Shown in pieces: positions 18,156-58,108 of a stretch of DNA of 64,000 nt; position 1 is the stretch's first letter, and each line of letters starts with the position of its first letter. The DNA is taken from IMG/VR virus record IMGVR_UViG_3300048924_000100, positions 150,199-214,198 of that record; one strand, 5' to 3'. The position numbers and the translations under genes are program-made. The notes below the pieces were generated by a model that had not been told where the DNA came from, ran no database searches, and was given only the letters and a program-made list of their open reading frames with translations.

Positions 18156-20474
18156 ATGATTAAACCAACAAACCCAGCTGCTGTGCAGATCCCGGACGGG
18201 CCTAACAACTCGATGAATCCGATGGGTCGGCCAGGTTACAACATGAACCAACAGCAAATGAACACCGCCCAGCAGTCTCCGGGTGATGTCATTCGCAACA
18301 TTCTGTCGCAAAACCTGAACAACACCAATGCTGCAACTGGTGGTGGTTTTAACTGGGGCGCTGCGGGCGGTAGTCTTTACGAAGACGATGCACTCCGCTC
18401 GTTGCGTACCAGTCAGGAAAACGATCCAACCAGCAACGCCTACTTGATTGACCGGGTAGCCGGTGCAATGCAAATGTTCCTGCAACAGATCTATCACCGT
18501 GCTGGACCTTTCTTTGAAGAGTACCGTAAAGCGCGCGAAGACTTCCGCATGAACGAGATGCAGCAAGTCGATGAGATTCGCAATGCATTTATTGATGACG
18601 TTAACAAGCAGCACGAGTTCACCCGCATCATCGCGATTAACTCCATGCCGTTCTTCGGTAAGGGTCTGATCGAGCTGTTGCGTACTGGCAACCGTGATCA
18701 GCTGCAACAGGCTGAATATCTGAACACGGCGTTTATTGCCTGTCGTAACGTGCTGTTCTTTGAAATGATTAACTGGTTGATGAAGTCGCCTAACGGCCGC
18801 CGTTATACCAACCGGTTGACTAAAGCTATCCAGTCGCGTATCAGCAACCTGGAGAACTTTAAGGAAGCTGCCGCAGCGGTATACGAAGTCTTTAACCAGA
18901 CCTCGCCGTACAACAACCTGGAGTTCAAGCGACCTGAATCGACCCGTACCGATTACAACATGCTTTACGGTCCGGCGTCAGATTACATTCAGCGTTCGTT
19001 CGAGCCCCAAGCTGTGCCGTCAGCAGCGTATCAGGATGAAGCCATGCGTGATATTTACAACATGGTAAACCAGAACGCAAACAACCGGGGCCAGTTCCAG
19101 CGTCCCCCTCAGGATAGATCACTTGTGATTGGAGGTGAGGTTATGCAAAGTTGGGATGAGGTGCGTAAAGACTTCAACAATCTGAAACCCGATAACCGTG
19201 GTGAGTTCCGGCTTAACCGGTTCTTCTACAGCATCGGGAAACCAAATCACTACTTCATCCCGGAGAGTGACTGGAAGAAGATTCAACACGCTTACCACCG
19301 TCACGAGGAACAGAAGGCAGAAGAAACAGTTCTCAAGGACTGCTTCCGTATTGTCATCATCGACCTCGAGAACGACGACGGCTGGTTCAGTACAATCGTC
19401 CGTAAAGAGGGCCTCGATATGCAAAGTGTCCTCACGGACCCGGCTAAGTTATTGCCGCTGTTGGAAAACCCAGACGAGTTGGATGACTCCTGGGTGGTTA
19501 AGCCTTATCCGTTGGCAGACGTCGTGGTTGAGAAAACCATGGACATCCCAATCGAAACCGTCGAGAAGATGGAACAGGCTGTACCGGTTATCGCAGTTGA
19601 TGATGCTGTTATCGGCAACTCTAGCGAAGGCCTGCTGACCACAATCAACACTGTTAACGATCGACTGACGTCCCGCTTCACCAAAATTAACGCCGTTGGT
19701 TTCAACGCTGTTAACTGGGACACTTACACCTGCAAGTCGAAAGAAGAGAAAGACCTGCTGCACGAAGACCTGGCGTTCCTGTTCAAGGACAACGACGGTC
19801 GCGCAAGCTTTGTCAATGCTGTTGCTGCTGTTGCTCGTTACGAACTCCAGAAAAAGGTTAGCCCTGACCTGATCAAGTTCATTGGTGGTCATCTGACTCA
19901 GGTGGTCAACAACTGGCTGATTAACTGTGCGGGCTACAACCCGAACAAGAACGGTAAGGGTCACCTGTCGGTTAGCAACATCCTGACTGACTATCGCGAG
20001 CTGATTGATTGGCTGAAACAACGCGATCCTGAAACCATGCTGCACCTGGTAGAAATGGAAAAAGCCAACTACCTCAACGAATCGGTCCGTATGTTCGACT
20101 TCGTCAACCCTTACACGTTGACTGAAGGCAAAGAACCGACGGCTATCGATCTGTTGAAAGCAGAACTGGAACTGACCGTAGGTCGCCGCATGTATGTTAA
20201 TGTGGTGAACAAGCGTACTGGTCCAGCGTATACCGAAGCTAATGTTCCAGTGCGTATCAAGCGCAGCAAGTGGCCGGAATACTTCAAGATGATTGAAGAC
20301 GGCTTCGATGAAACCATGGGTGAACTCGGCGACGTAACTGTCACTGACAAACTGCTGCGCTTCTCTGAAAGTGGCGGGCTGTGGTTGTTCAGTTACTCCA
20401 TCATCGATCGTAACGTTGCTACACTGCGCTTCGTGTCTCATGATAAGCCACTGTGCTTGCTGGGACTCTGCTAA
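18156..20474 (+). CDS. Large conserved hypothetical protein with N/Q/M-rich N-terminus
   Basis: 772 aa, AGGAG RBS, downstream of the nvRNAP subunit gene. Confidence 0.75.
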   Translation: MIKPTNPAAVQIPDGPNNSMNPMGRPGYNMNQQQMNTAQQSPGDVIRNILSQNLNNTNAATGGGFNWGAAGGSLYEDDALRSLRTSQENDPTSNAYLIDRVAGAMQMFLQQIYHRAGPFFEEYRKAREDFRMNEMQQVDEIRNAFIDDVNKQHEFTRIIAINSMPFFGKGLIELLRTGNRDQLQQAEYLNTAFIACRNVLFFEMINWLMKSPNGRRYTNRLTKAIQSRISNLENFKEAAAAVYEVFNQTSPYNNLEFKRPESTRTDYNMLYGPASDYIQRSFEPQAVPSAAYQDEAMRDIYNMVNQNANNRGQFQRPPQDRSLVIGGEVMQSWDEVRKDFNNLKPDNRGEFRLNRFFYSIGKPNHYFIPESDWKKIQHAYHRHEEQKAEETVLKDCFRIVIIDLENDDGWFSTIVRKEGLDMQSVLTDPAKLLPLLENPDELDDSWVVKPYPLADVVVEKTMDIPIETVEKMEQAVPVIAVDDAVIGNSSEGLLTTINTVNDRLTSRFTKINAVGFNAVNWDTYTCKSKEEKDLLHEDLAFLFKDNDGRASFVNAVAAVARYELQKKVSPDLIKFIGGHLTQVVNNWLINCAGYNPNKNGKGHLSVSNILTDYRELIDWLKQRDPETMLHLVEMEKANYLNESVRMFDFVNPYTLTEGKEPTAIDLLKAELELTVGRRMYVNVVNKRTGPAYTEANVPVRIKRSKWPEYFKMIEDGFDETMGELGDVTVTDKLLRFSESGGLWLFSYSIIDRNVATLRFVSHDKPLCLLGLC

Positions 20475-20501: not shown

Positions 20502-20531
20502 AACCTAACAGGGGTGACGCCCTGTTAGGTT
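20502..20531 (+). terminator. Hairpin terminator
   Basis: 12-bp stem aacctaacaggg/ccctgttaggtt. Confidence 0.65.
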
Positions 20532-20553
20532 GCACCTATGGTGTGCTTTGTTT

Positions 20554-20598
20554 TTTAAGATACAGTTAATCTCACGTCTATATTACTTGGGTGATTAA
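20554..20598 (+). promoter_or_regulatory. Early promoter element, copy 1 (TATATTAC at 20579-20586)
   Basis: 41/45 nt identical to 56756-56800; contains the phiKZ early consensus TATATTAC. Confidence 0.8.
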
Positions 20599-20641
20599 GA
20601 CAATAAAGTCTTTCATACTTATCCCAGCTGGAGTAATAAAC

Positions 20642-20974
20642 ATGACTTCTTTGAATCAAACAGAACGCGCCGCAATCGAAAAATCTTTCCGTGGCGACCG
20701 CAACGACGGCGTGAGTGTTGGTCAAATCGCCGGCGTAGCTGGTGCTCTGATTGGCGCAGCAGCATGTGTATCTCAGGGCAGTTCCCTGGGTGCTGGTATC
20801 GCAGGCGGTATCGCAGGCGGCGTTGCCGGCTATGCAGTAGGTACCTGCTGGGGTCTGGTAGAAGTAAACACCACTGGCAAGATCATCAGTGGCACCATGT
20901 CCGGTCTGTTCGGCGCTGGTGTCGCCAGTTCCATCTGCTCCATCGTTGATTGTTTCGTAAACGAGCCTAAGTAA
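20642..20974 (+). CDS. Small glycine-zipper membrane protein
   Basis: 110 aa from ATG 20642 (GGAG RBS); GxxxG-rich hydrophobic segments; homologous to the C-terminus of 56858-58006. Confidence 0.7.
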   Translation: MTSLNQTERAAIEKSFRGDRNDGVSVGQIAGVAGALIGAAACVSQGSSLGAGIAGGIAGGVAGYAVGTCWGLVEVNTTGKIISGTMSGLFGAGVASSICSIVDCFVNEPK

Positions 20975-20984
20975 TCTAGGCTGC

Positions 20985-21019
20985 AAATAAAGGAGAGTGT
21001 GAACTCTCCTTTATTTTTT
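20985..21019 (+). terminator. Intrinsic terminator
   Basis: Stem aaataaaggagagt/actctcctttattt plus T-run; makes the glycine-zipper gene monocistronic. Confidence 0.8.
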
Positions 21020-30609: not shown

Positions 30610-31334
30610 CCACCAGCGATACTGCTGTACCAGAGGAAGGTGCACAGGTGGAGCCCGCACCTTCCTTTGAGGAAAGAATAGAGCAGCGACTCACCAACAT
30701 GGACCAGCGAGTTACCCAGCTGGTTTGTGAACTTATCAGCCGTGTTGACGCTACCAGTGGTCGTAATCGTGCTTCTGTGACCAAGACGGTAACTGAAGAG
30801 ACGCAGCCAGGGCCTCTGGAAGAGTACACAGGGTCTCAGGATGAGTCAGGTGCAATGACATCAGTCCTGGACAACCAAGACCCCTCTGCGATCCTTGCAG
30901 ACGCTCAGTCGTCCACTGTGGTAAAGAAGGTTACTCGTACAGTCACTCCTGTAGGGATTGAACGTGAAGTCTTTGGTATGTGGTCGGTTATGCTGCGCAA
31001 CGCTGGCGGTATTCTCGCTGCAACCACCACCTGCATCATTGCTATTGTAAACGCCTACACCACTTACATGTCGGTAACCAGCGGACACGGATGGCCTTCC
31101 GAGACCACTATGTTCATTGCCAACATCGGCCCTATTGTGGTGGCGTGGACGTTTATGAACTCCAGTAAGACTATCTCTACCATCATGCAAGTGCGTGGTG
31201 TACAAGACCGTCTGAAGAACGCCATGTCAGGGTTCCTCTCGAACCAGGATAACAACCGCCGGTCTACTGATGTTGACAGACCGGATACACCGCCTCCTGC
31301 TCCACCGCCTGGACCTGTACCACCGCAATACTGA
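30606..31334 (+). CDS. Candidate holin / two-TM membrane protein
   Basis: About 242 aa, ATGA overlap with ruvC; two hydrophobic segments; Pro-rich C-tail; adjacent to spanin-like genes. Confidence 0.45.
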   Translation: MTTSDTAVPEEGAQVEPAPSFEERIEQRLTNMDQRVTQLVCELISRVDATSGRNRASVTKTVTEETQPGPLEEYTGSQDESGAMTSVLDNQDPSAILADAQSSTVVKKVTRTVTPVGIEREVFGMWSVMLRNAGGILAATTTCIIAIVNAYTTYMSVTSGHGWPSETTMFIANIGPIVVAWTFMNSSKTISTIMQVRGVQDRLKNAMSGFLSNQDNNRRSTDVDRPDTPPPAPPPGPVPPQY

Positions 31335-48191: not shown

Positions 48192-48199
48192 TATATTAC
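48192..48199 (+). promoter_or_regulatory. Early promoter (aaaccTATATTAC)
   Basis: Exact phiKZ early consensus just after the sbcC stop; opens the accessory region. Confidence 0.75.
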
Positions 48200-48298
48200 T
48201 AGCAGGTAGAGACATAAGTGTCGTTGTCTCTTTTAGTTGTATTCGTACTGCAAGGTCCTGTTTATGACAGCCTACTACTTCTGGAAGAGATAACGATC

Positions 48299-48580
48299 AT
48301 GCAAACTGCACAGATCTCGATTGCGCAAAACACTGATGGCTCCTATTCCCCCCACGATCAAGGTATGGGGATGGCGTTCGTGAGCTACAACTACGACATC
48401 AGCGGCAAAACCGCTATCATCAACTTCGCCGGCATCAATCAGGCCAGCGTTACCTTCGATGAGACAGGCAGCACCGTGGTGTCTTACCACATGCTGAACC
48501 TGAACGCTACAGCGTCGGATATGACCACGGTCGAGAACATCGCCCGTTACCTCACTTCGGCGGTTGCTACCCTTCATTGA
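48299..48580 (+). CDS. Hypothetical early protein (93 aa)
   Basis: ATG 48299; first gene after the early promoter; beta-rich, low charge. Confidence 0.6.
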   Translation: MQTAQISIAQNTDGSYSPHDQGMGMAFVSYNYDISGKTAIINFAGINQASVTFDETGSTVVSYHMLNLNATASDMTTVENIARYLTSAVATLH

Positions 48581-54623: not shown

Positions 54624-55547
54624 ATGGCTTTGAAGACTGATACTGAGTTTAAACCTGTTCTGTGCATCTATCACAAAGACTGTCTGGACGGCATCGGTGC
54701 CGCATGGGTGGTGTGGCGCCATTTCAAGAACATGGGTATTGACATCGAGTTGGTGGCTGCTGCTTACAAAGACAAGCTGCCGGTCGTCGATGGCAAGGTG
54801 GTTTACGTAGTTGACTTCAGTTATCCGCGCGATGTCATGGTAGAACTGTTAGGGCGTGCGCATGACGTGGTGGTTCTGGATCACCATACCAGTGCCAAAA
54901 GAAACCTGGAAGGGCTCTTCGTTGTCGACGAGAGTCATTCTGGCGCCATGCTGGCCTGGAAGTATTTCAATAGCACTCCTCCACCAGAAGGTTTGCTGTA
55001 CGTTGAAGACCGAGACCTGTGGAAGTTCAAATACCCGAATACCAACAATTGGGTAACCGCAGCGTTCTCCTATCCGTTCAACGTTGAGCAGTTCGATGCA
55101 CTGATGAACAGCGACCCACTGGACCTCATCCACGAGGGCAAGATCCTGTTGCGTAAGCACCAGCAAGACACCGGTCGTGTAGCATTGAACGCCCGCATGA
55201 TGAAGTGCATGGGGTATACGGTACCCGTGGTAAACGCCAACATTTTCTTTGCGTCTGACCTGGGCGACATGCTCTCCAAGGATTACCCGTTCGCACTGAT
55301 CTACATGGATCTACCACACGGACGTAAGTACTCCATTCGCTGCCAGAAGAAGTGTATGGACGTTTCCAAGATCGCCGAATACTTTGGTGGTGGCGGTCAT
55401 GCTGACGCCTCGGGTTTCTCGATCCGTTATGACGACAAGCGTTTTGCCCGTAGTCATGAAGTGCTCGACTATTCGTTGCGCGACAAGATCATGGCTTATC
55501 TGAAGAACCCAATCGTCACGCTGAAGTTTCTACTAGGGAAGAAGTAA
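54624..55547 (+). CDS. DHH/DHHA1 phosphoesterase (NrnB/nanoRNase-like)
   Basis: 307 aa; HKDCLDG, VVDFS, LDHH, EDRDLW, GGGGHADASGF. Confidence 0.88.
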   Translation: MALKTDTEFKPVLCIYHKDCLDGIGAAWVVWRHFKNMGIDIELVAAAYKDKLPVVDGKVVYVVDFSYPRDVMVELLGRAHDVVVLDHHTSAKRNLEGLFVVDESHSGAMLAWKYFNSTPPPEGLLYVEDRDLWKFKYPNTNNWVTAAFSYPFNVEQFDALMNSDPLDLIHEGKILLRKHQQDTGRVALNARMMKCMGYTVPVVNANIFFASDLGDMLSKDYPFALIYMDLPHGRKYSIRCQKKCMDVSKIAEYFGGGGHADASGFSIRYDDKRFARSHEVLDYSLRDKIMAYLKNPIVTLKFLLGKK

Positions 55548-55848: not shown

Positions 55849-56016
55849 ATGGAAAGCGATAACCTGTTCTTTGTAGAAAGTGATCGTTACGGGTTCGGGT
55901 ACCTGATGGCCCCAGAGCGTTATGACGATATCCTCATCGCCACCGAGCGGCTGAAGACCCGTATCCAATCAGGCGCCACCCTGGTGCGTGTGGAAGTCAA
56001 ACGTACCAAGGGTTAA
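55849..56016 (+). CDS. Small hypothetical protein (55 aa, absent from ORF track)
   Basis: Hand-translated MESDNLFFVESDRYGFGYLMAPERYDDILIATERLKTRIQSGATLVRVEVKRTKG; fills the gap between neighbours. Confidence 0.55.
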   Translation: MESDNLFFVESDRYGFGYLMAPERYDDILIATERLKTRIQSGATLVRVEVKRTKG

Positions 56017-56020
56017 GCAC

Positions 56021-56470
56021 ATGAAACCGGATTACAGTTACATCAGTGTGCAGCTTAAGTCAGAGATGCAGGCCGAGATCATTTCTACTCTGATCCTGGC
56101 GGGTATCTCTCCAGAAGCCAAACATGAACTACACGCCACCATGGTGTATGACGATCGCAGCATCGCAGCGCCGTTGTGCGACCTGGCGCCATCTTCCAAG
56201 GAATTCTCGGCGAACGTCATTGCCCTGGAAACTTTGGGGGACGGTCTGGTGTTCAAACTCACCAGCGTTGATATGCTGGAAGAGTTTCGCCGTTTAAAGG
56301 AAGCCGGGTATCAACACTCTTACGGCACGCCTTTGTTCCACATGTCGCTGAAGTATGACTTCGATAAGTATGACATCCTCGCGCTTAATCAGGCGTTTGC
56401 TAATTGGGGTGGTCGTACGCTGATCTTCAACAACGAGCAGTACGGTATCACGAAACCAAAGAAAACGTAA
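56021..56470 (+). CDS. acb1: Acb1-like 2H phosphodiesterase (anti-CBASS nuclease family)
   Basis: 149 aa from ATG 56021. HAT (H38) and HMS (H107) motifs 69 residues apart, as recalled for T4 Acb1 H44/H113; N-terminal YISV strand; LVFKLTS segment. Confidence 0.72.
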   Translation: MKPDYSYISVQLKSEMQAEIISTLILAGISPEAKHELHATMVYDDRSIAAPLCDLAPSSKEFSANVIALETLGDGLVFKLTSVDMLEEFRRLKEAGYQHSYGTPLFHMSLKYDFDKYDILALNQAFANWGGRTLIFNNEQYGITKPKKT

Positions 56471-56557: not shown

Positions 56558-56565
56558 TACATCAT
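56558..56565 (+). promoter_or_regulatory. Possible early promoter variant (aacTACATCAT)
   Basis: Degenerate match upstream of the 46-aa ORF. Confidence 0.35.
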
Positions 56566-56606: not shown

Positions 56607-56747
56607 ATGAGAACCGCGCTGTTCCTTATCGGGATGTTAAGCATTGTAACTTCCTGCGTAATGGTCGCGGGTCAGCTTGATACTTCCGACAACCTCAATA
56701 GCACTGAGTACATCACTCGGGGCATTATGCAAGCCATACAACGGTAA
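56607..56747 (+). CDS. Small secreted or lipoprotein candidate (46 aa, absent from ORF track)
   Basis: TAGGAG RBS; MRTALFLIGMLSIVTSC.. signal peptide with lipobox-like VTS-C. Confidence 0.6.
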   Translation: MRTALFLIGMLSIVTSCVMVAGQLDTSDNLNSTEYITRGIMQAIQR

Positions 56748-56755
56748 TGTAGAAA

Positions 56756-56800
56756 TTTAAGATACAGTTGGTTTCACGTCTATATTACTTGTGTGATTAA
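56756..56800 (+). promoter_or_regulatory. Early promoter element, copy 2 (TATATTAC at 56781-56788)
   Basis: 41/45 nt identical to 20554-20598. Confidence 0.8.
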
Positions 56801-56857
56801 TAATAAAGATTATTCGTATCTAAGAATAGTCTAACCCAATTTAACAGGAGCACCGCT

Positions 56858-58006
56858 ATGAATACCAAGAACCAAGAAGTTGCCAACATCGCTTCCATGA
56901 TGGTAGCGGTCATCACCCAACTTCGTACTGATGGCGCACCGGAGCCGATTCAATTGGCTTATGCTAAAACGGTGATGATGGATCAGGAACAGGTCAATAC
57001 TCGTGACCGCCAGCCTGTGCTTCAACTGGTGAACAACCAGCTCGGTACCAAATGGTCTTTCAACCAGATCAAGAAAGCCGAGAACTTCGTCCAGAACAAT
57101 GAACCAATCAAGGTTCAAGAACTGAACGGTACTGCACAGGTCAATGTCTCCGGCCAACCTGCTGAAGCCACTTTCGTTGAGAAGGCTCCTCAGGTTGATG
57201 GCCACGTGCACCTGCAACAAACCAACAACGCAGAAACCACTGCGCCTGACCAAGCCGGTCAAACTTCTTCTATCAACTCCACTGCAAACGAACAGGAAAA
57301 CGACACCATGAACGCACAAGTAAACGCTACCTCCAACATCGCTGAAAACGTTAAAGCCTTCGCACTGGCCATGTCCCTGGTCGGCCGCAACACCGCTGAA
57401 CAACGCGCCGAAGCCTGGACCGCGTTCATTGCTACCTCGCCTGAACAAGCTGCTCTGTGGGCTCTGTTCTCGGCAACTGCTGACGCCACCAAGTCGTTCG
57501 ACGAGAACTTCGTCACGTTCAGCGAAGGCCTGGGCGAAGAAGAAGGCAAGACTCTGGTCACCAACTTCATGCGCTGGTCTGCAGCTAACCAGCCAAAAGG
57601 TGATGCTCACTACTCCGACAAGTCGCGTTACAGCCTGATGGGCGATCGTGACGAAGGCATTCGTACCAGCTGGATCGCAGTAGGCTCCGCAGTGATCGGC
57701 GGTGGTATGGAAGCATTCGCCCGTGGTGGTCTGAACGTCGGTTCGGCGGTCGGTACCGTAGTGGGTGGTGTTGCTGCATTCTTCGCTGGTGAGCAGGTTG
57801 ACCAGCACGTAGAGAGCCAGTTCGGTCGCTACGTAGTCGGCGGCATGATCGGTCTGGGCCTGGGTGGTGCTGGTGCGGCCCTGGGTCGTAGCGTCCTGCC
57901 TGGTAACCCACTGCTCGAAATGAACAACAACGTCGCTGCTGCACCGGCTCGTATCGAAGCTCAGCCTACCGCGCCACAAGGCTCGCTCGGCTTCTTCGGC
58001 ATGTAA
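56858..58006 (+). CDS. Early protein with C-terminal glycine-zipper membrane domain
   Basis: 382 aa, CAGGAG RBS, extreme codon bias; C-terminus aligns with 20642-20974 (GDR[ND][DE]G[VI] plus GxxxG helices). Confidence 0.75.
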   Translation: MNTKNQEVANIASMMVAVITQLRTDGAPEPIQLAYAKTVMMDQEQVNTRDRQPVLQLVNNQLGTKWSFNQIKKAENFVQNNEPIKVQELNGTAQVNVSGQPAEATFVEKAPQVDGHVHLQQTNNAETTAPDQAGQTSSINSTANEQENDTMNAQVNATSNIAENVKAFALAMSLVGRNTAEQRAEAWTAFIATSPEQAALWALFSATADATKSFDENFVTFSEGLGEEEGKTLVTNFMRWSAANQPKGDAHYSDKSRYSLMGDRDEGIRTSWIAVGSAVIGGGMEAFARGGLNVGSAVGTVVGGVAAFFAGEQVDQHVESQFGRYVVGGMIGLGLGGAGAALGRSVLPGNPLLEMNNNVAAAPARIEAQPTAPQGSLGFFGM

Positions 58007-58021: not shown

Positions 58022-58052
58022 AAGGGGATCGAAAGGTCCCCTTATTTTTTAT
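58022..58052 (+). terminator. Intrinsic terminator
   Basis: aaggggatc-GAAA-ggtcccctt plus T-run. Confidence 0.8.
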
Positions 58053-58108
58053 TAACACCCAACCCTTTTGTAACACACCCCATTAACTCATTTTGAAGGA
58101 ACAAAATC

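What the first reader, a model, noticed from the sequence alone, without database searches (positions are those of the whole stretch)
20554..21019. Two homologous glycine-zipper membrane genes 36 kb apart share a near-identical 45-bp early promoter
Seen: 20554-20598 and 56756-56800 match at 41/45 nt, far beyond the 8-nt TATATTAC core seen at other promoters, and include TCAC-N15-GTGA around the core. Each drives a monocistronic unit with its own terminator. The proteins align: SFRGDRNDGVSVGQIAGVAGALIG vs SLMGDRDEGIRTSWIAVGSAVIG, then GxxxG helices. Their DNA has diverged far more than the promoter, so the upstream element looks selected. Inference: a co-regulated family of very early, oligomerising membrane proteins. 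Possible roles are the early phage infection vesicle, superinfection exclusion or membrane remodelling.
Basis: partly seen in the sequence, partly recalled or inferred. Interest (0 to 1): 0.75.

Follow-up and report, generated by a model that had tools for sequence, protein, structure and literature searches.

The report
Jumbo-phage early promoters, paralogous membrane genes
The 45-bp repeat is a full-length early promoter of a phage-EL-like jumbo phage, one of at least five of its class in the genome.

Summary
The 41/45 match (20554-20598 vs 56756-56800) is real. It is not private to these two genes. The genome is a 214-kb relative of Pseudomonas phage EL. It has 9 exact TATATTAC cores and 18 promoter-model hits, all on one strand. 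Five share the same three-part layout: TTTAAGATACA, a T-rich box, C-TATATTAC, then GTGATTAA. That layout matches published predicted early promoters of phiKZ-like phages. The A and B promoters form a slightly closer sub-type (41/45 against 29-38 for other class I pairs).

Both promoters persist at the orthologous genes in five related metagenomic phages and, recognisably, in phage EL (gp082, gp127).

The proteins are homologous beyond composition. Profile-profile comparison gives probability 94.7%, E 5.6e-8, score 46, against at most 31 in 180 column shuffles. Gene B is 382 aa, and only its C-terminal ~100 aa match the 110-aa gene A.

The shared domain models confidently as three long, almost charge-free helices (pLDDT 88.6). 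It has no Pfam, PDB or fold match. Membrane location, oligomerisation and early timing remain inferences, and no RNA data were found.

Extras: conserved leader stem-loops, and a conserved DHH-Acb1-gene B neighbourhood.

The parts
20502..20531 (+). Inverted repeat (12-bp arms, 6-nt loop) after the stop of the 772-aa gene (EL gp081 homologue). A T-run follows at about 20546-20556, directly before promoter A.
   Evidence: Read directly. The equivalent hairpin precedes the promoter in all relatives.
20554..20598 (+). Promoter A, a class I early (virion-RNA-polymerase-type) promoter. It has a -30 box TTTAAGATACA (20554-20564), a T-rich box (20570-20578), an extended -10 core TATATTAC (20579-20586) and the start region GTGATTAA (20591-20598).
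   Evidence: It scores 34.1 bits with a model trained on relatives only. The layout matches published predicted early promoters (PMC7058600 Table 2; PMC8244752).
20591..20616 (+). Predicted 5'-proximal stem-loop of the A leader: GUGA / UCAU and AAGAC / GUCUU.
   Evidence: -6.0 kcal/mol, z -2.3. On 28 class I leaders 86% of cells pair, against 38-56% when the partner is slid. Only 5 cells show a compensatory change.
20642..20974 (+). Gene A: a 110-aa protein, preceded by GGAG at 20630-20633. Its three Gly/Ala-rich hydrophobic helices make up a stand-alone copy of the shared domain (about 20681-20956). It is the orthologue of phage EL gp082.
   Evidence: BLASTP to EL gp082, E 4e-12.
20985..21019 (+). 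Intrinsic-terminator-like hairpin (14 pairs) plus T-run, closing the single-gene unit A.
56756..56800 (+). Promoter B, a class I early promoter of the same sub-type as A. Its -30 box is at 56756-56766, the core TATATTAC at 56781-56788 and GTGATTAA at 56793-56800. It is the highest-scoring promoter in the genome.
   Evidence: It scores 40.2 bits.
56807..56832 (+). Predicted stem-loop in the B leader (9-bp stem). In the orthologues the 3' arm varies A to G in ways that keep G-U pairing.
   Evidence: -9.5 kcal/mol, z -3.7.
56858..58006 (+). Gene B: a 382-aa protein, preceded by AGGAG at 56846-56850. It has an N-terminal part of about 250 aa of unknown function with an Asn/Gln/Thr-rich linker. It is the orthologue of phage EL gp127.
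   Evidence: BLASTP to EL gp127, E 4e-18. 25 of 43 family members match phrog_29858.
57620..57907 (+). C-terminal domain of gene B (residues about 255-350), homologous to gene A. It has the juxta-membrane motif S-x-x-G-x-R-D-E-G-I-R followed by three long helices.
   Evidence: hhalign. Shuffle controls. AlphaFold2 pLDDT 88.6, with helices at 21-40, 45-68 and 72-97 of the modelled piece.
58022..58053 (+). Intrinsic-terminator-like hairpin (9 pairs) plus T-run, closing the single-gene unit B.

Best explanation
The window comes from a 214-kb jumbo phage of the phage-EL branch of the phiKZ-like (nucleus-forming) phages. The 45-bp element is a complete early promoter of the kind read by the injected virion RNA polymerase in this group. 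It has a -30 box (TTTAAGATACA), a T-rich box, the extended -10 core (C)TATATTAC and the initiation region GTGATTAA. The initiation region is also the 5' arm of a leader stem-loop. At least five such 'class I' promoters exist in this genome, and A and B form a slightly closer sub-type.

They drive two single-gene units that encode ancient paralogues. Gene A is a stand-alone copy (110 aa) of a roughly 95-aa Gly/Ala-rich three-helix domain. Gene B carries the same domain at the C-terminus of a 382-aa protein. The duplication predates the split from phage EL (gp082 and gp127).

Shown: the promoter class and its conservation, the paralogy, and the helical, almost charge-free nature of the domain.

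Inferred:
- Both genes are transcribed immediately after DNA injection.
- The domain inserts in a membrane as a small-residue-packed three-helix bundle, with the basic N-terminal side in the cytoplasm.
- The proteins act early at the cell membrane or entry site. My best guess is protection or exclusion at the envelope, or counter-defence, rather than forming the first export channel of the infection vesicle. A channel needed for the first mRNA export must already exist before any early protein is made.
For: Genome and lineage:
- The 772-aa neighbour is 38% identical to phage EL gp081.
- Split RNA polymerase beta and beta' ORFs are present.

Promoter:
- There are 9 of 9 exact cores on one strand here, and 43 of 43 in five relatives.
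- A model trained on the relatives gives 18 hits on the + strand and 0 on the - strand.
- Published consensus for 201phi2-1, OBP, N1M2 and EL has the same layout, including GTG after the core (PMC7058600).
- The phiKZ early motif is described as an extended -10 box plus a T-rich element, with mapped start sites (PMC8244752).

Conservation at the orthologous genes.

Synteny with phage EL.

Paralogy:
- BLASTP gives E 0.001.
- hhalign gives E 5.5e-5 between the two family alignments.
- Against a 63-member profile it gives probability 94.7%, E 5.6e-8.
- The observed score of 46 compares with a maximum of 31 in 180 column shuffles and 23 when the alignment is reversed.
- The two families align collinearly over all three helices.

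Structure:
- AlphaFold2 gives pLDDT 88.6 and pTM 0.78 for three helices.
- Uncharged stretches of 15-29 residues are present.
Against: - No transcript data exist for this phage. No RNA run was listed.
- Membrane insertion rests on hydropathy and a model. No dedicated predictor or experiment was used, and several segments have only moderate hydropathy of 1.2-1.4.
- Helix 1 of gene B carries a conserved Glu and Arg.
- A plain HMM of the B domain does not find gene A in the genome or among its 63 library hits. The paralogy therefore rests on profile-profile comparison.
- The gene A model alone is poor, with pLDDT 50.7.
- The oligomer prediction gave no answer.
- The proposed function is a guess.
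Confidence: 0.6

Rival explanations
1. The near-identity reflects recent copying (gene conversion or cassette duplication) of one promoter onto the other in this lineage. It would not reflect selection for a special, shared regulation of the two genes.
For: A/B identity is 41/45 here but 36-39/45 in four relatives. The window's B promoter has TCACGTC where most B orthologues have TTGTGTC or TTGCGTC.
Against: Both promoters sit at orthologous positions in all relatives and in phage EL, so they are old. A distant B orthologue (L020) also has the TCACGTC form, so that form may be ancestral. About 31 of the 45 positions are class consensus, which leaves only about 3-5 extra shared positions to explain.
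Confidence: 0.15
2. The element is a host sigma-70 promoter (TTAAGA, 18-nt spacer, TATATT) read by the bacterial RNA polymerase.
For: The simple sigma-70 scan flags both copies at 9 of 12 matches.
Against: The spacer of 18 nt is suboptimal. Conserved positions lie outside the sigma-70 hexamers: the C before the core, TAC after it, and GTGA at +4. Class II promoters have the same core without any -35-like box. The core equals the phiKZ early motif, which the literature assigns to the virion polymerase. The phage encodes its own multisubunit polymerase pieces.
Confidence: 0.07
3. TCAC-N15-GTGA is an operator for a dimeric regulator that co-regulates just these two genes.
For: The inverted repeat is present around the core in both copies and in all A orthologues.
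Against: The TCAC arm is absent from most B orthologues and from the other class I promoters. GTGA is conserved everywhere and pairs downstream with UCAY in the leader.
Confidence: 0.05
4. The two proteins are soluble Gly/Ala-rich helical bundles, and their similarity is convergent or compositional.
For: There is no Pfam or TM-family hit. Hydropathy of several segments is moderate. Language-model look-alikes score only about 0.8, which is at the noise level. Fold searches give nothing significant.
Against: The profile-profile score is far above the column-shuffled and reversed controls. The two share a non-compositional motif, G-x-R-[DN]-[DE]-G-[VI], and a collinear three-helix layout. The helices of 20-26 residues lack the charged faces expected of soluble bundles.
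Confidence: 0.15

Closest known systems
Early (virion RNA polymerase) promoters of phiKZ-like jumbo phages: the phiKZ TATATTAC motif and the predicted consensus for 201phi2-1, OBP, N1M2 and EL
   Same: The core is identical to phiKZ and 201phi2-1. The layout is the same: a T-rich box upstream, a further AT-rich box near -30, and GTG 4 nt after the core (PMC7058600 Table 2; PMC8244752; PMC11512511). The sites are strand-coherent and sit after terminators, in front of genes of unknown function.
   Different: The -30 box here has its own sequence (TTTAAGATACA) and marks only a subset, class I. About 25 nt of leader that can form a stem-loop are co-conserved. I did not find that described in the papers I read. 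No start site has been mapped for this phage.
Pseudomonas phage EL gp082 and gp127 (hypothetical proteins); PHROG phrog_29858 (unknown function)
   Same: They are orthologues by sequence (E 4e-12 and 4e-18). They are also orthologues by synteny: gp081 is followed by gp082, and gp125 DHH and gp126 are followed by gp127. A similar promoter lies upstream of each. 25 of 43 gene B family members match phrog_29858.
   Different: Identity is only 25-33%. Gene B itself scores E 0.83 against the PHROG. None of these proteins has a described function.
Glycine-zipper small membrane proteins and Gly-rich pore-forming peptides (Pfam Gly-zipper families, class II bacteriocins, colicin V)
   Same: Runs of G/A-xxx-G/A in long hydrophobic helices, and small size. 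The language-model nearest clusters are of this type.
   Different: There is no Pfam match at E up to 1. The Atlas scores of about 0.8 are at noise level. There is no secretion leader. The domain is a three-helix unit with its own conserved charged motif.
Immediate-early small inner-membrane proteins of other phages, such as T4 Imm (from general knowledge, not tested here)
   Same: A small, very early, membrane-embedded product made from its own promoter.
   Different: No sequence relationship was detected: there is no Pfam hit of any kind. The function of the present proteins is unknown.

Membership tests
phiKZ-type early (virion RNAP) promoter | Extended -10 core TATATTAC | tested here: met
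   Exact core at 20579-20586 and 56781-56788. There are 9 in the genome, all on the + strand.
phiKZ-type early (virion RNAP) promoter | T-rich element upstream of about -19 and further AT-rich conservation near -30 | tested here: met
   The class I consensus has TTTyrrgyC directly before the core and TTTAAGATACA further upstream. Compare PMC8244752 and PMC7058600.
phiKZ-type early (virion RNAP) promoter | Strand-coherent and intergenic, at the head of transcription units | tested here: met
   52 of 52 cores lie on the coding strand in six genomes. Model hits are 18 against 0. The sites lie between a terminator and a ribosome-binding site.
phiKZ-type early (virion RNAP) promoter | The phage encodes multisubunit RNA polymerases of its own | tested here: inconclusive
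   One beta-like ORF (PF00562, 30.3 bits) and one beta'-like ORF (PF00623, 25.5 bits with neighbours) were found. The two full sets, virion and non-virion, were not enumerated.
phiKZ-type early (virion RNAP) promoter | A transcript starts a few nt downstream, early in infection, independently of host RNA polymerase | not testable with these tools
   No RNA run was listed. The DNA comes from a root metagenome.
Pfam glycine-zipper families (Gly-zipper_Omp, Gly-zipper_YMGG and relatives) | Match to the family HMM | tested here: not met
   There were no Pfam hits at E up to 1 for either protein, and none among 43 family members.
PHROG phrog_29858 (unknown function) | Match to the family HMM | tested here: inconclusive
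   Gene B itself scores E 0.83, but 25 of 43 of its relatives match, with a best E of 6.3e-11. Gene A has no hit.
Integral membrane protein | Hydrophobic helices of about 20 residues, and membrane fractionation | tested here: inconclusive
   Three helices of 20-26 residues are nearly free of charge. Hydropathy over a 19-residue window is 1.2-1.7. No experimental test or dedicated predictor was available.
Homo-oligomeric pore or channel | Self-association | tested here: inconclusive
   Complex prediction with 4 copies gave 'no answer'.
Holin | Match to holin families, late expression, and a lysis-gene neighbourhood | tested here: not met
   Only 1 of 43 family members touches a holin PHROG, at E 2.5e-4. 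The genes have early-type promoters. Their neighbours are a DNA-polymerase-linked gene, and DHH and Acb1.

The most novel reading that the evidence does not exclude
Gene A and gene B (EL gp082 and gp127) are the first phage-encoded, newly synthesised membrane components of the early infection compartment or entry site of nucleus-forming jumbo phages. They could be subunits that modify vesicle or inner-membrane permeability after the first round of early translation. Alternatively they could be membrane-level counter-defence factors linked to the conserved DHH-Acb1 neighbourhood. The 2025 review states that the vesicle's channels are still unidentified (PMC12908238).
Probability: 0.1. Interest if true: 0.8.

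Novelty: new member of a known kind. Interest (0 to 1): 0.35.

Why it matters
For annotation, it gives a usable early-promoter model for an uncultured EL-like phage clade. The model has two classes, and a profile trained on relatives gives 18 hits against 0 on the wrong strand.

For biology, it picks out a conserved pair of early, probably membrane-embedded paralogues. They are present from this root-metagenome phage to the cultivable phage EL, where they could be tested directly. Early membrane proteins of nucleus-forming phages are essentially uncharacterised, and the membrane stage of their infection is an open topic. The promoter itself is ordinary for the group.

Tried and rejected
- tblastn of both proteins against GenBank phages found no match. 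The EL orthologues were reached only through a family member and through synteny.
- Pfam and PHROG scans of both proteins gave nothing significant.
- PDB sequence search with both profiles gave nothing below E 0.1.
- Foldseek of the confident domain model against PDB and AlphaFold clusters gave no hit with E below 0.6. The nearest shapes are small membrane hairpins such as ATP synthase c subunit, holins and a glycine-zipper entry, all non-significant.
- AlphaFold2 of gene A with its shallow alignment gave pLDDT 50.7, so it was not used for fold search.
- The Atlas look-alikes (class II bacteriocins, about 0.8) were treated as noise-level leads.
- The four-copy complex prediction gave no answer.
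- Searches for sequencing runs found only DNA metagenomes, and no RNA run was listed.
- I rejected the GTG at 20591 as a start codon. The apparent N-terminal extension (MIKTIKSFIL...) recurs in three leaders only because the leader DNA is conserved. Orthologues with a 1-nt shorter leader break that frame.
- I rejected TCAC-N15-GTGA as a conserved palindrome.
- A plain HMM of the B domain does not detect gene A in the genome.
- Rfam found nothing in the window.
- A literature search for EL gp82 or gp127 returned nothing relevant.

Full report
**What the sequence shows**

The two 45-mers, 20554-20598 and 56756-56800, differ at four positions. A search for the first 45-mer with up to three mismatches finds only itself, and none is expected by chance.

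Each element lies about 45-60 nt upstream of a start codon with a Shine-Dalgarno sequence:
- GGAG at 20630, then ATG at 20642.
- AGGAG at 56846, then ATG at 56858.

Each gene is followed by a hairpin plus T-run, at 20985-21016 and 58022-58043. The 'single gene with its own terminator' description therefore holds.

Gene A encodes 110 aa. The mechanical ORF from the GTG at 20591 is an artefact of the conserved leader. Gene B encodes 382 aa, so it is not a small protein.

**Where the window comes from**

The window is the last 64 kb of a 214,198-bp IMG/VR virus record, 93% complete and 51% G+C. It was assembled from a root metagenome.

The 772-aa protein just upstream of gene A is 38% identical to phage EL gp081. 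It is more distantly related to proteins of Erwinia RisingSun-like and other jumbo phages. The genome carries beta-like and beta'-like RNA polymerase ORFs. This is therefore a distant member of the EL branch of the phiKZ-like jumbo phages.

**The element is a promoter class, not a private repeat**

- TATATTAC occurs 9 times in the genome, always on the + strand.
- In five related complete genomes it occurs 7-12 times each, always on the coding strand. The reversed-pattern controls give 0-1.
- A weight matrix trained only on the relatives gives 18 hits of at least 12 bits on the + strand of this genome and none on the - strand. Promoter B is the best hit at 40.2 bits, and promoter A scores 34.1.

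Aligning all 52 sites separates two classes:
- Class I (about 26 sites, 4-6 per genome) reads TTTAAGATACA, five variable bases, TTTyrrgyC, TATATTAC, four variable bases, then GTGATTAAGACAATTAAGTCTTTCA.
- Class II has the same core and a T-rich/AAACC box, but no TTTAAGATA.

Five class I promoters exist in this genome, at genome positions 13976, 31124, 76810, 170752 (A) and 206954 (B). Those at 31149, 76835 and A also share the leader and ribosome-binding site almost to the start codon. Their products are unrelated proteins of unknown function.

Other class I pairs in this genome share 29-38 of 45. A and B share 41 here and 36-39 in four relatives. A and B do form a sub-type, marked by ACAG after the -30 box, GTC before the core and TTGK after it. 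The excess over the class background is only a few bases.

**Relation to published promoters**

The phiKZ early motif is described as an extended -10 box with a T-rich element upstream of -19. It was found at 32 mapped start sites (PMC8244752). The 201phi2-1 study places the AT-rich early motif about 10 bp upstream of the start site and reports conservation at the -10, -20 and -30 regions (PMC11512511).

Predicted early promoters of 201phi2-1, OBP, N1M2 and EL are tabulated in PMC7058600. They show the same order of elements, including GTG four bases after the core. The 45-mer is therefore a full-length early promoter of a known kind. The literature assigns that kind to the injected virion RNA polymerase.

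A sigma-70 reading (TTAAGA, 18 nt, TATATT; 9 of 12 matches) is possible on paper. It does not explain the conserved C before the core, the TAC, the GTGA, or the class II sites.

**Selection on the promoters**

Both promoters are present at the orthologous genes in every relative examined. The proteins in those relatives have diverged to 69-80% identity for A and 64-68% for B, and to about 38% for the more distant B orthologues.

In phage EL, the A orthologue is gp082 (E 4e-12) and the B orthologue is gp127 (E 4e-18). Each sits in the same gene order and is preceded by a terminator and a recognisably similar promoter. Distant B homologues on other metagenome contigs have it as well.

The TCAC half of the proposed palindrome is not conserved. 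The conserved GTGA instead pairs downstream.

**Leader structure**

Taken from GTGA, class I leaders fold into a stem-loop: GUGA with UCAY, and AAGAC with GUCUU. The energy is -6 to -8 kcal/mol, with z about -2.1 to -2.6 for those folded against shuffles.

On 28 aligned leaders, 86% of cells pair, against 38-56% when the 3' partner is slid by 1-3 columns. Examples of double changes are AAGAT/ATCTT and AAAGGCA/TGCCTTT. Only 5 cells are compensatory, so covariation support is thin.

The B leader has a different and stronger hairpin at 56807-56832 (-9.5 kcal/mol, z -3.7). In the orthologues its 3' arm changes mostly A to G, which keeps G-U pairs. That favours an RNA-level structure. A role in mRNA stability or translation is an inference.

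**The proteins**

- Pairwise BLASTP gives 36% identity over 55 aa, E 0.001.
- Family alignments were built from metagenomic homologues: A2 with 10 sequences and A3 with 18. hhalign between them gives probability 66%, E 5.5e-5. The score of 36 compares with 14.8 +/- 2.8 for global column shuffles and 17.1 +/- 3.9 for 12-column block shuffles, with maxima of 25.9 and 30.6.
- A profile search with the B domain in 1.8 billion representatives found 63 proteins. Most are 350-520 aa with the domain at the C-terminus. A few are stand-alone proteins of 113-130 aa.
- Against this broader profile, the gene A family scores probability 94.7%, E 5.6e-8, score 46. The controls give 12.6 +/- 2.1 for global shuffles, 15.9 +/- 4.0 for 12-column blocks and 20.1 +/- 4.6 for 6-column blocks, with a maximum of 31, and 23 for the reversed alignment.
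- The two families align collinearly through a charged motif, S/F-x-x-G-x-R-[DN]-[DE]-G-[VI]-[RS], and three hydrophobic segments.

The stated refutation, that the similarity is 'only compositional', is therefore not met.

Some caveats apply. A plain HMM of the B domain does not detect gene A. No Pfam family matches either protein or their relatives. 25 of 43 gene B relatives match phrog_29858, a family of unknown function.

**Fold and location**

With the 61-sequence alignment, the B domain models at pLDDT 88.6 and pTM 0.78. It forms three helices of 20, 24 and 26 residues. Gene A alone models poorly (pLDDT 50.7) but is also all-helical.

The helices coincide with uncharged stretches of 15-29 residues. 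No PDB or AlphaFold-cluster fold matches significantly, and no solved structure is related by sequence.

Membrane insertion is the most economical reading but is not demonstrated. The oligomer prediction returned no answer.

**Function**

Nothing here measures function. The facts that constrain it are:
- Both genes sit behind the strongest class of early promoter.
- The pair is conserved from this phage to EL.
- Gene B lies directly after a DHH/DHHA1 phosphoesterase and an Acb1 (anti-CBASS) homologue. This block recurs in EL and in two unrelated contigs.
- Proteins made from early mRNAs cannot be the channel through which those first mRNAs leave the infection vesicle. The review in PMC12908238 notes that such channels are still unidentified.

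I therefore favour an early role at the cell membrane or entry site, such as protection, exclusion or counter-defence. I hold this with low confidence. A role in the vesicle remains a minority possibility.

**Verdict**

The promoter is an ordinary, well-conserved member of a known class that is shared with other genes. The specific functional ideas remain untested. Interest is moderate to low for the promoter and moderate for the conserved early membrane-protein pair.

Noticed in passing
window 54624-55547 and 55988-56470: The first is a DHH/DHHA1 phosphoesterase. The second is an Acb1 (anti-CBASS, PF23474, 32.4 bits) homologue. Both lie just upstream of gene B. The order DHH, Acb1, then a gene B family member recurs in phage EL (gp125-gp127, where gp126 is annotated 'RNA ligase') and on two unrelated metagenome contigs (L079, L080).
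   Followed up: partly
window 56607-56747 (promoter-like site with core at 56558): A 46-aa ORF with a signal-peptide-like start and a lipobox-like IVTSC lies between Acb1 and promoter B. It is preceded by a weak early-type promoter hit (core TACATCAT, 12.9 bits). It has no family match.
   Followed up: partly
window 48192-48300: A class II early promoter is followed at about +8 to +35 by a hairpin (GTAGAGAC...GTCTCT) and a T-run. The stem changes in the five relatives in ways that keep pairing. The next start codon is only at 48300. It could be a leader attenuator or a small RNA. There is no Rfam match.
   Followed up: partly
genome position 71504 (outside the window; locus L003): An early promoter is embedded in an inverted repeat (TCTGTTGCTC ... 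GAGCAACAGA). More than 50 nt of almost invariant non-coding sequence follow it in all relatives.
   Followed up: no
window 18156-20474: A 772-aa protein (phrog_13213, unknown function) is the homologue of phage EL gp081, which follows a gene annotated 'polymerase' in EL. It is conserved directly upstream of gene A in all relatives.
   Followed up: partly
window 15259 and 58708; genome-wide: Further early-type promoter hits include EL-like cores (TACATTAT or TACATTAC). All 18 hits in the genome lie on the + strand.
   Followed up: partly
locus L081, first ~30 bases: This public metagenome contig, which carries a gene B homologue, begins with what looks like a Nextera sequencing-adapter sequence. 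Its 5' end is therefore not biological.
   Followed up: no
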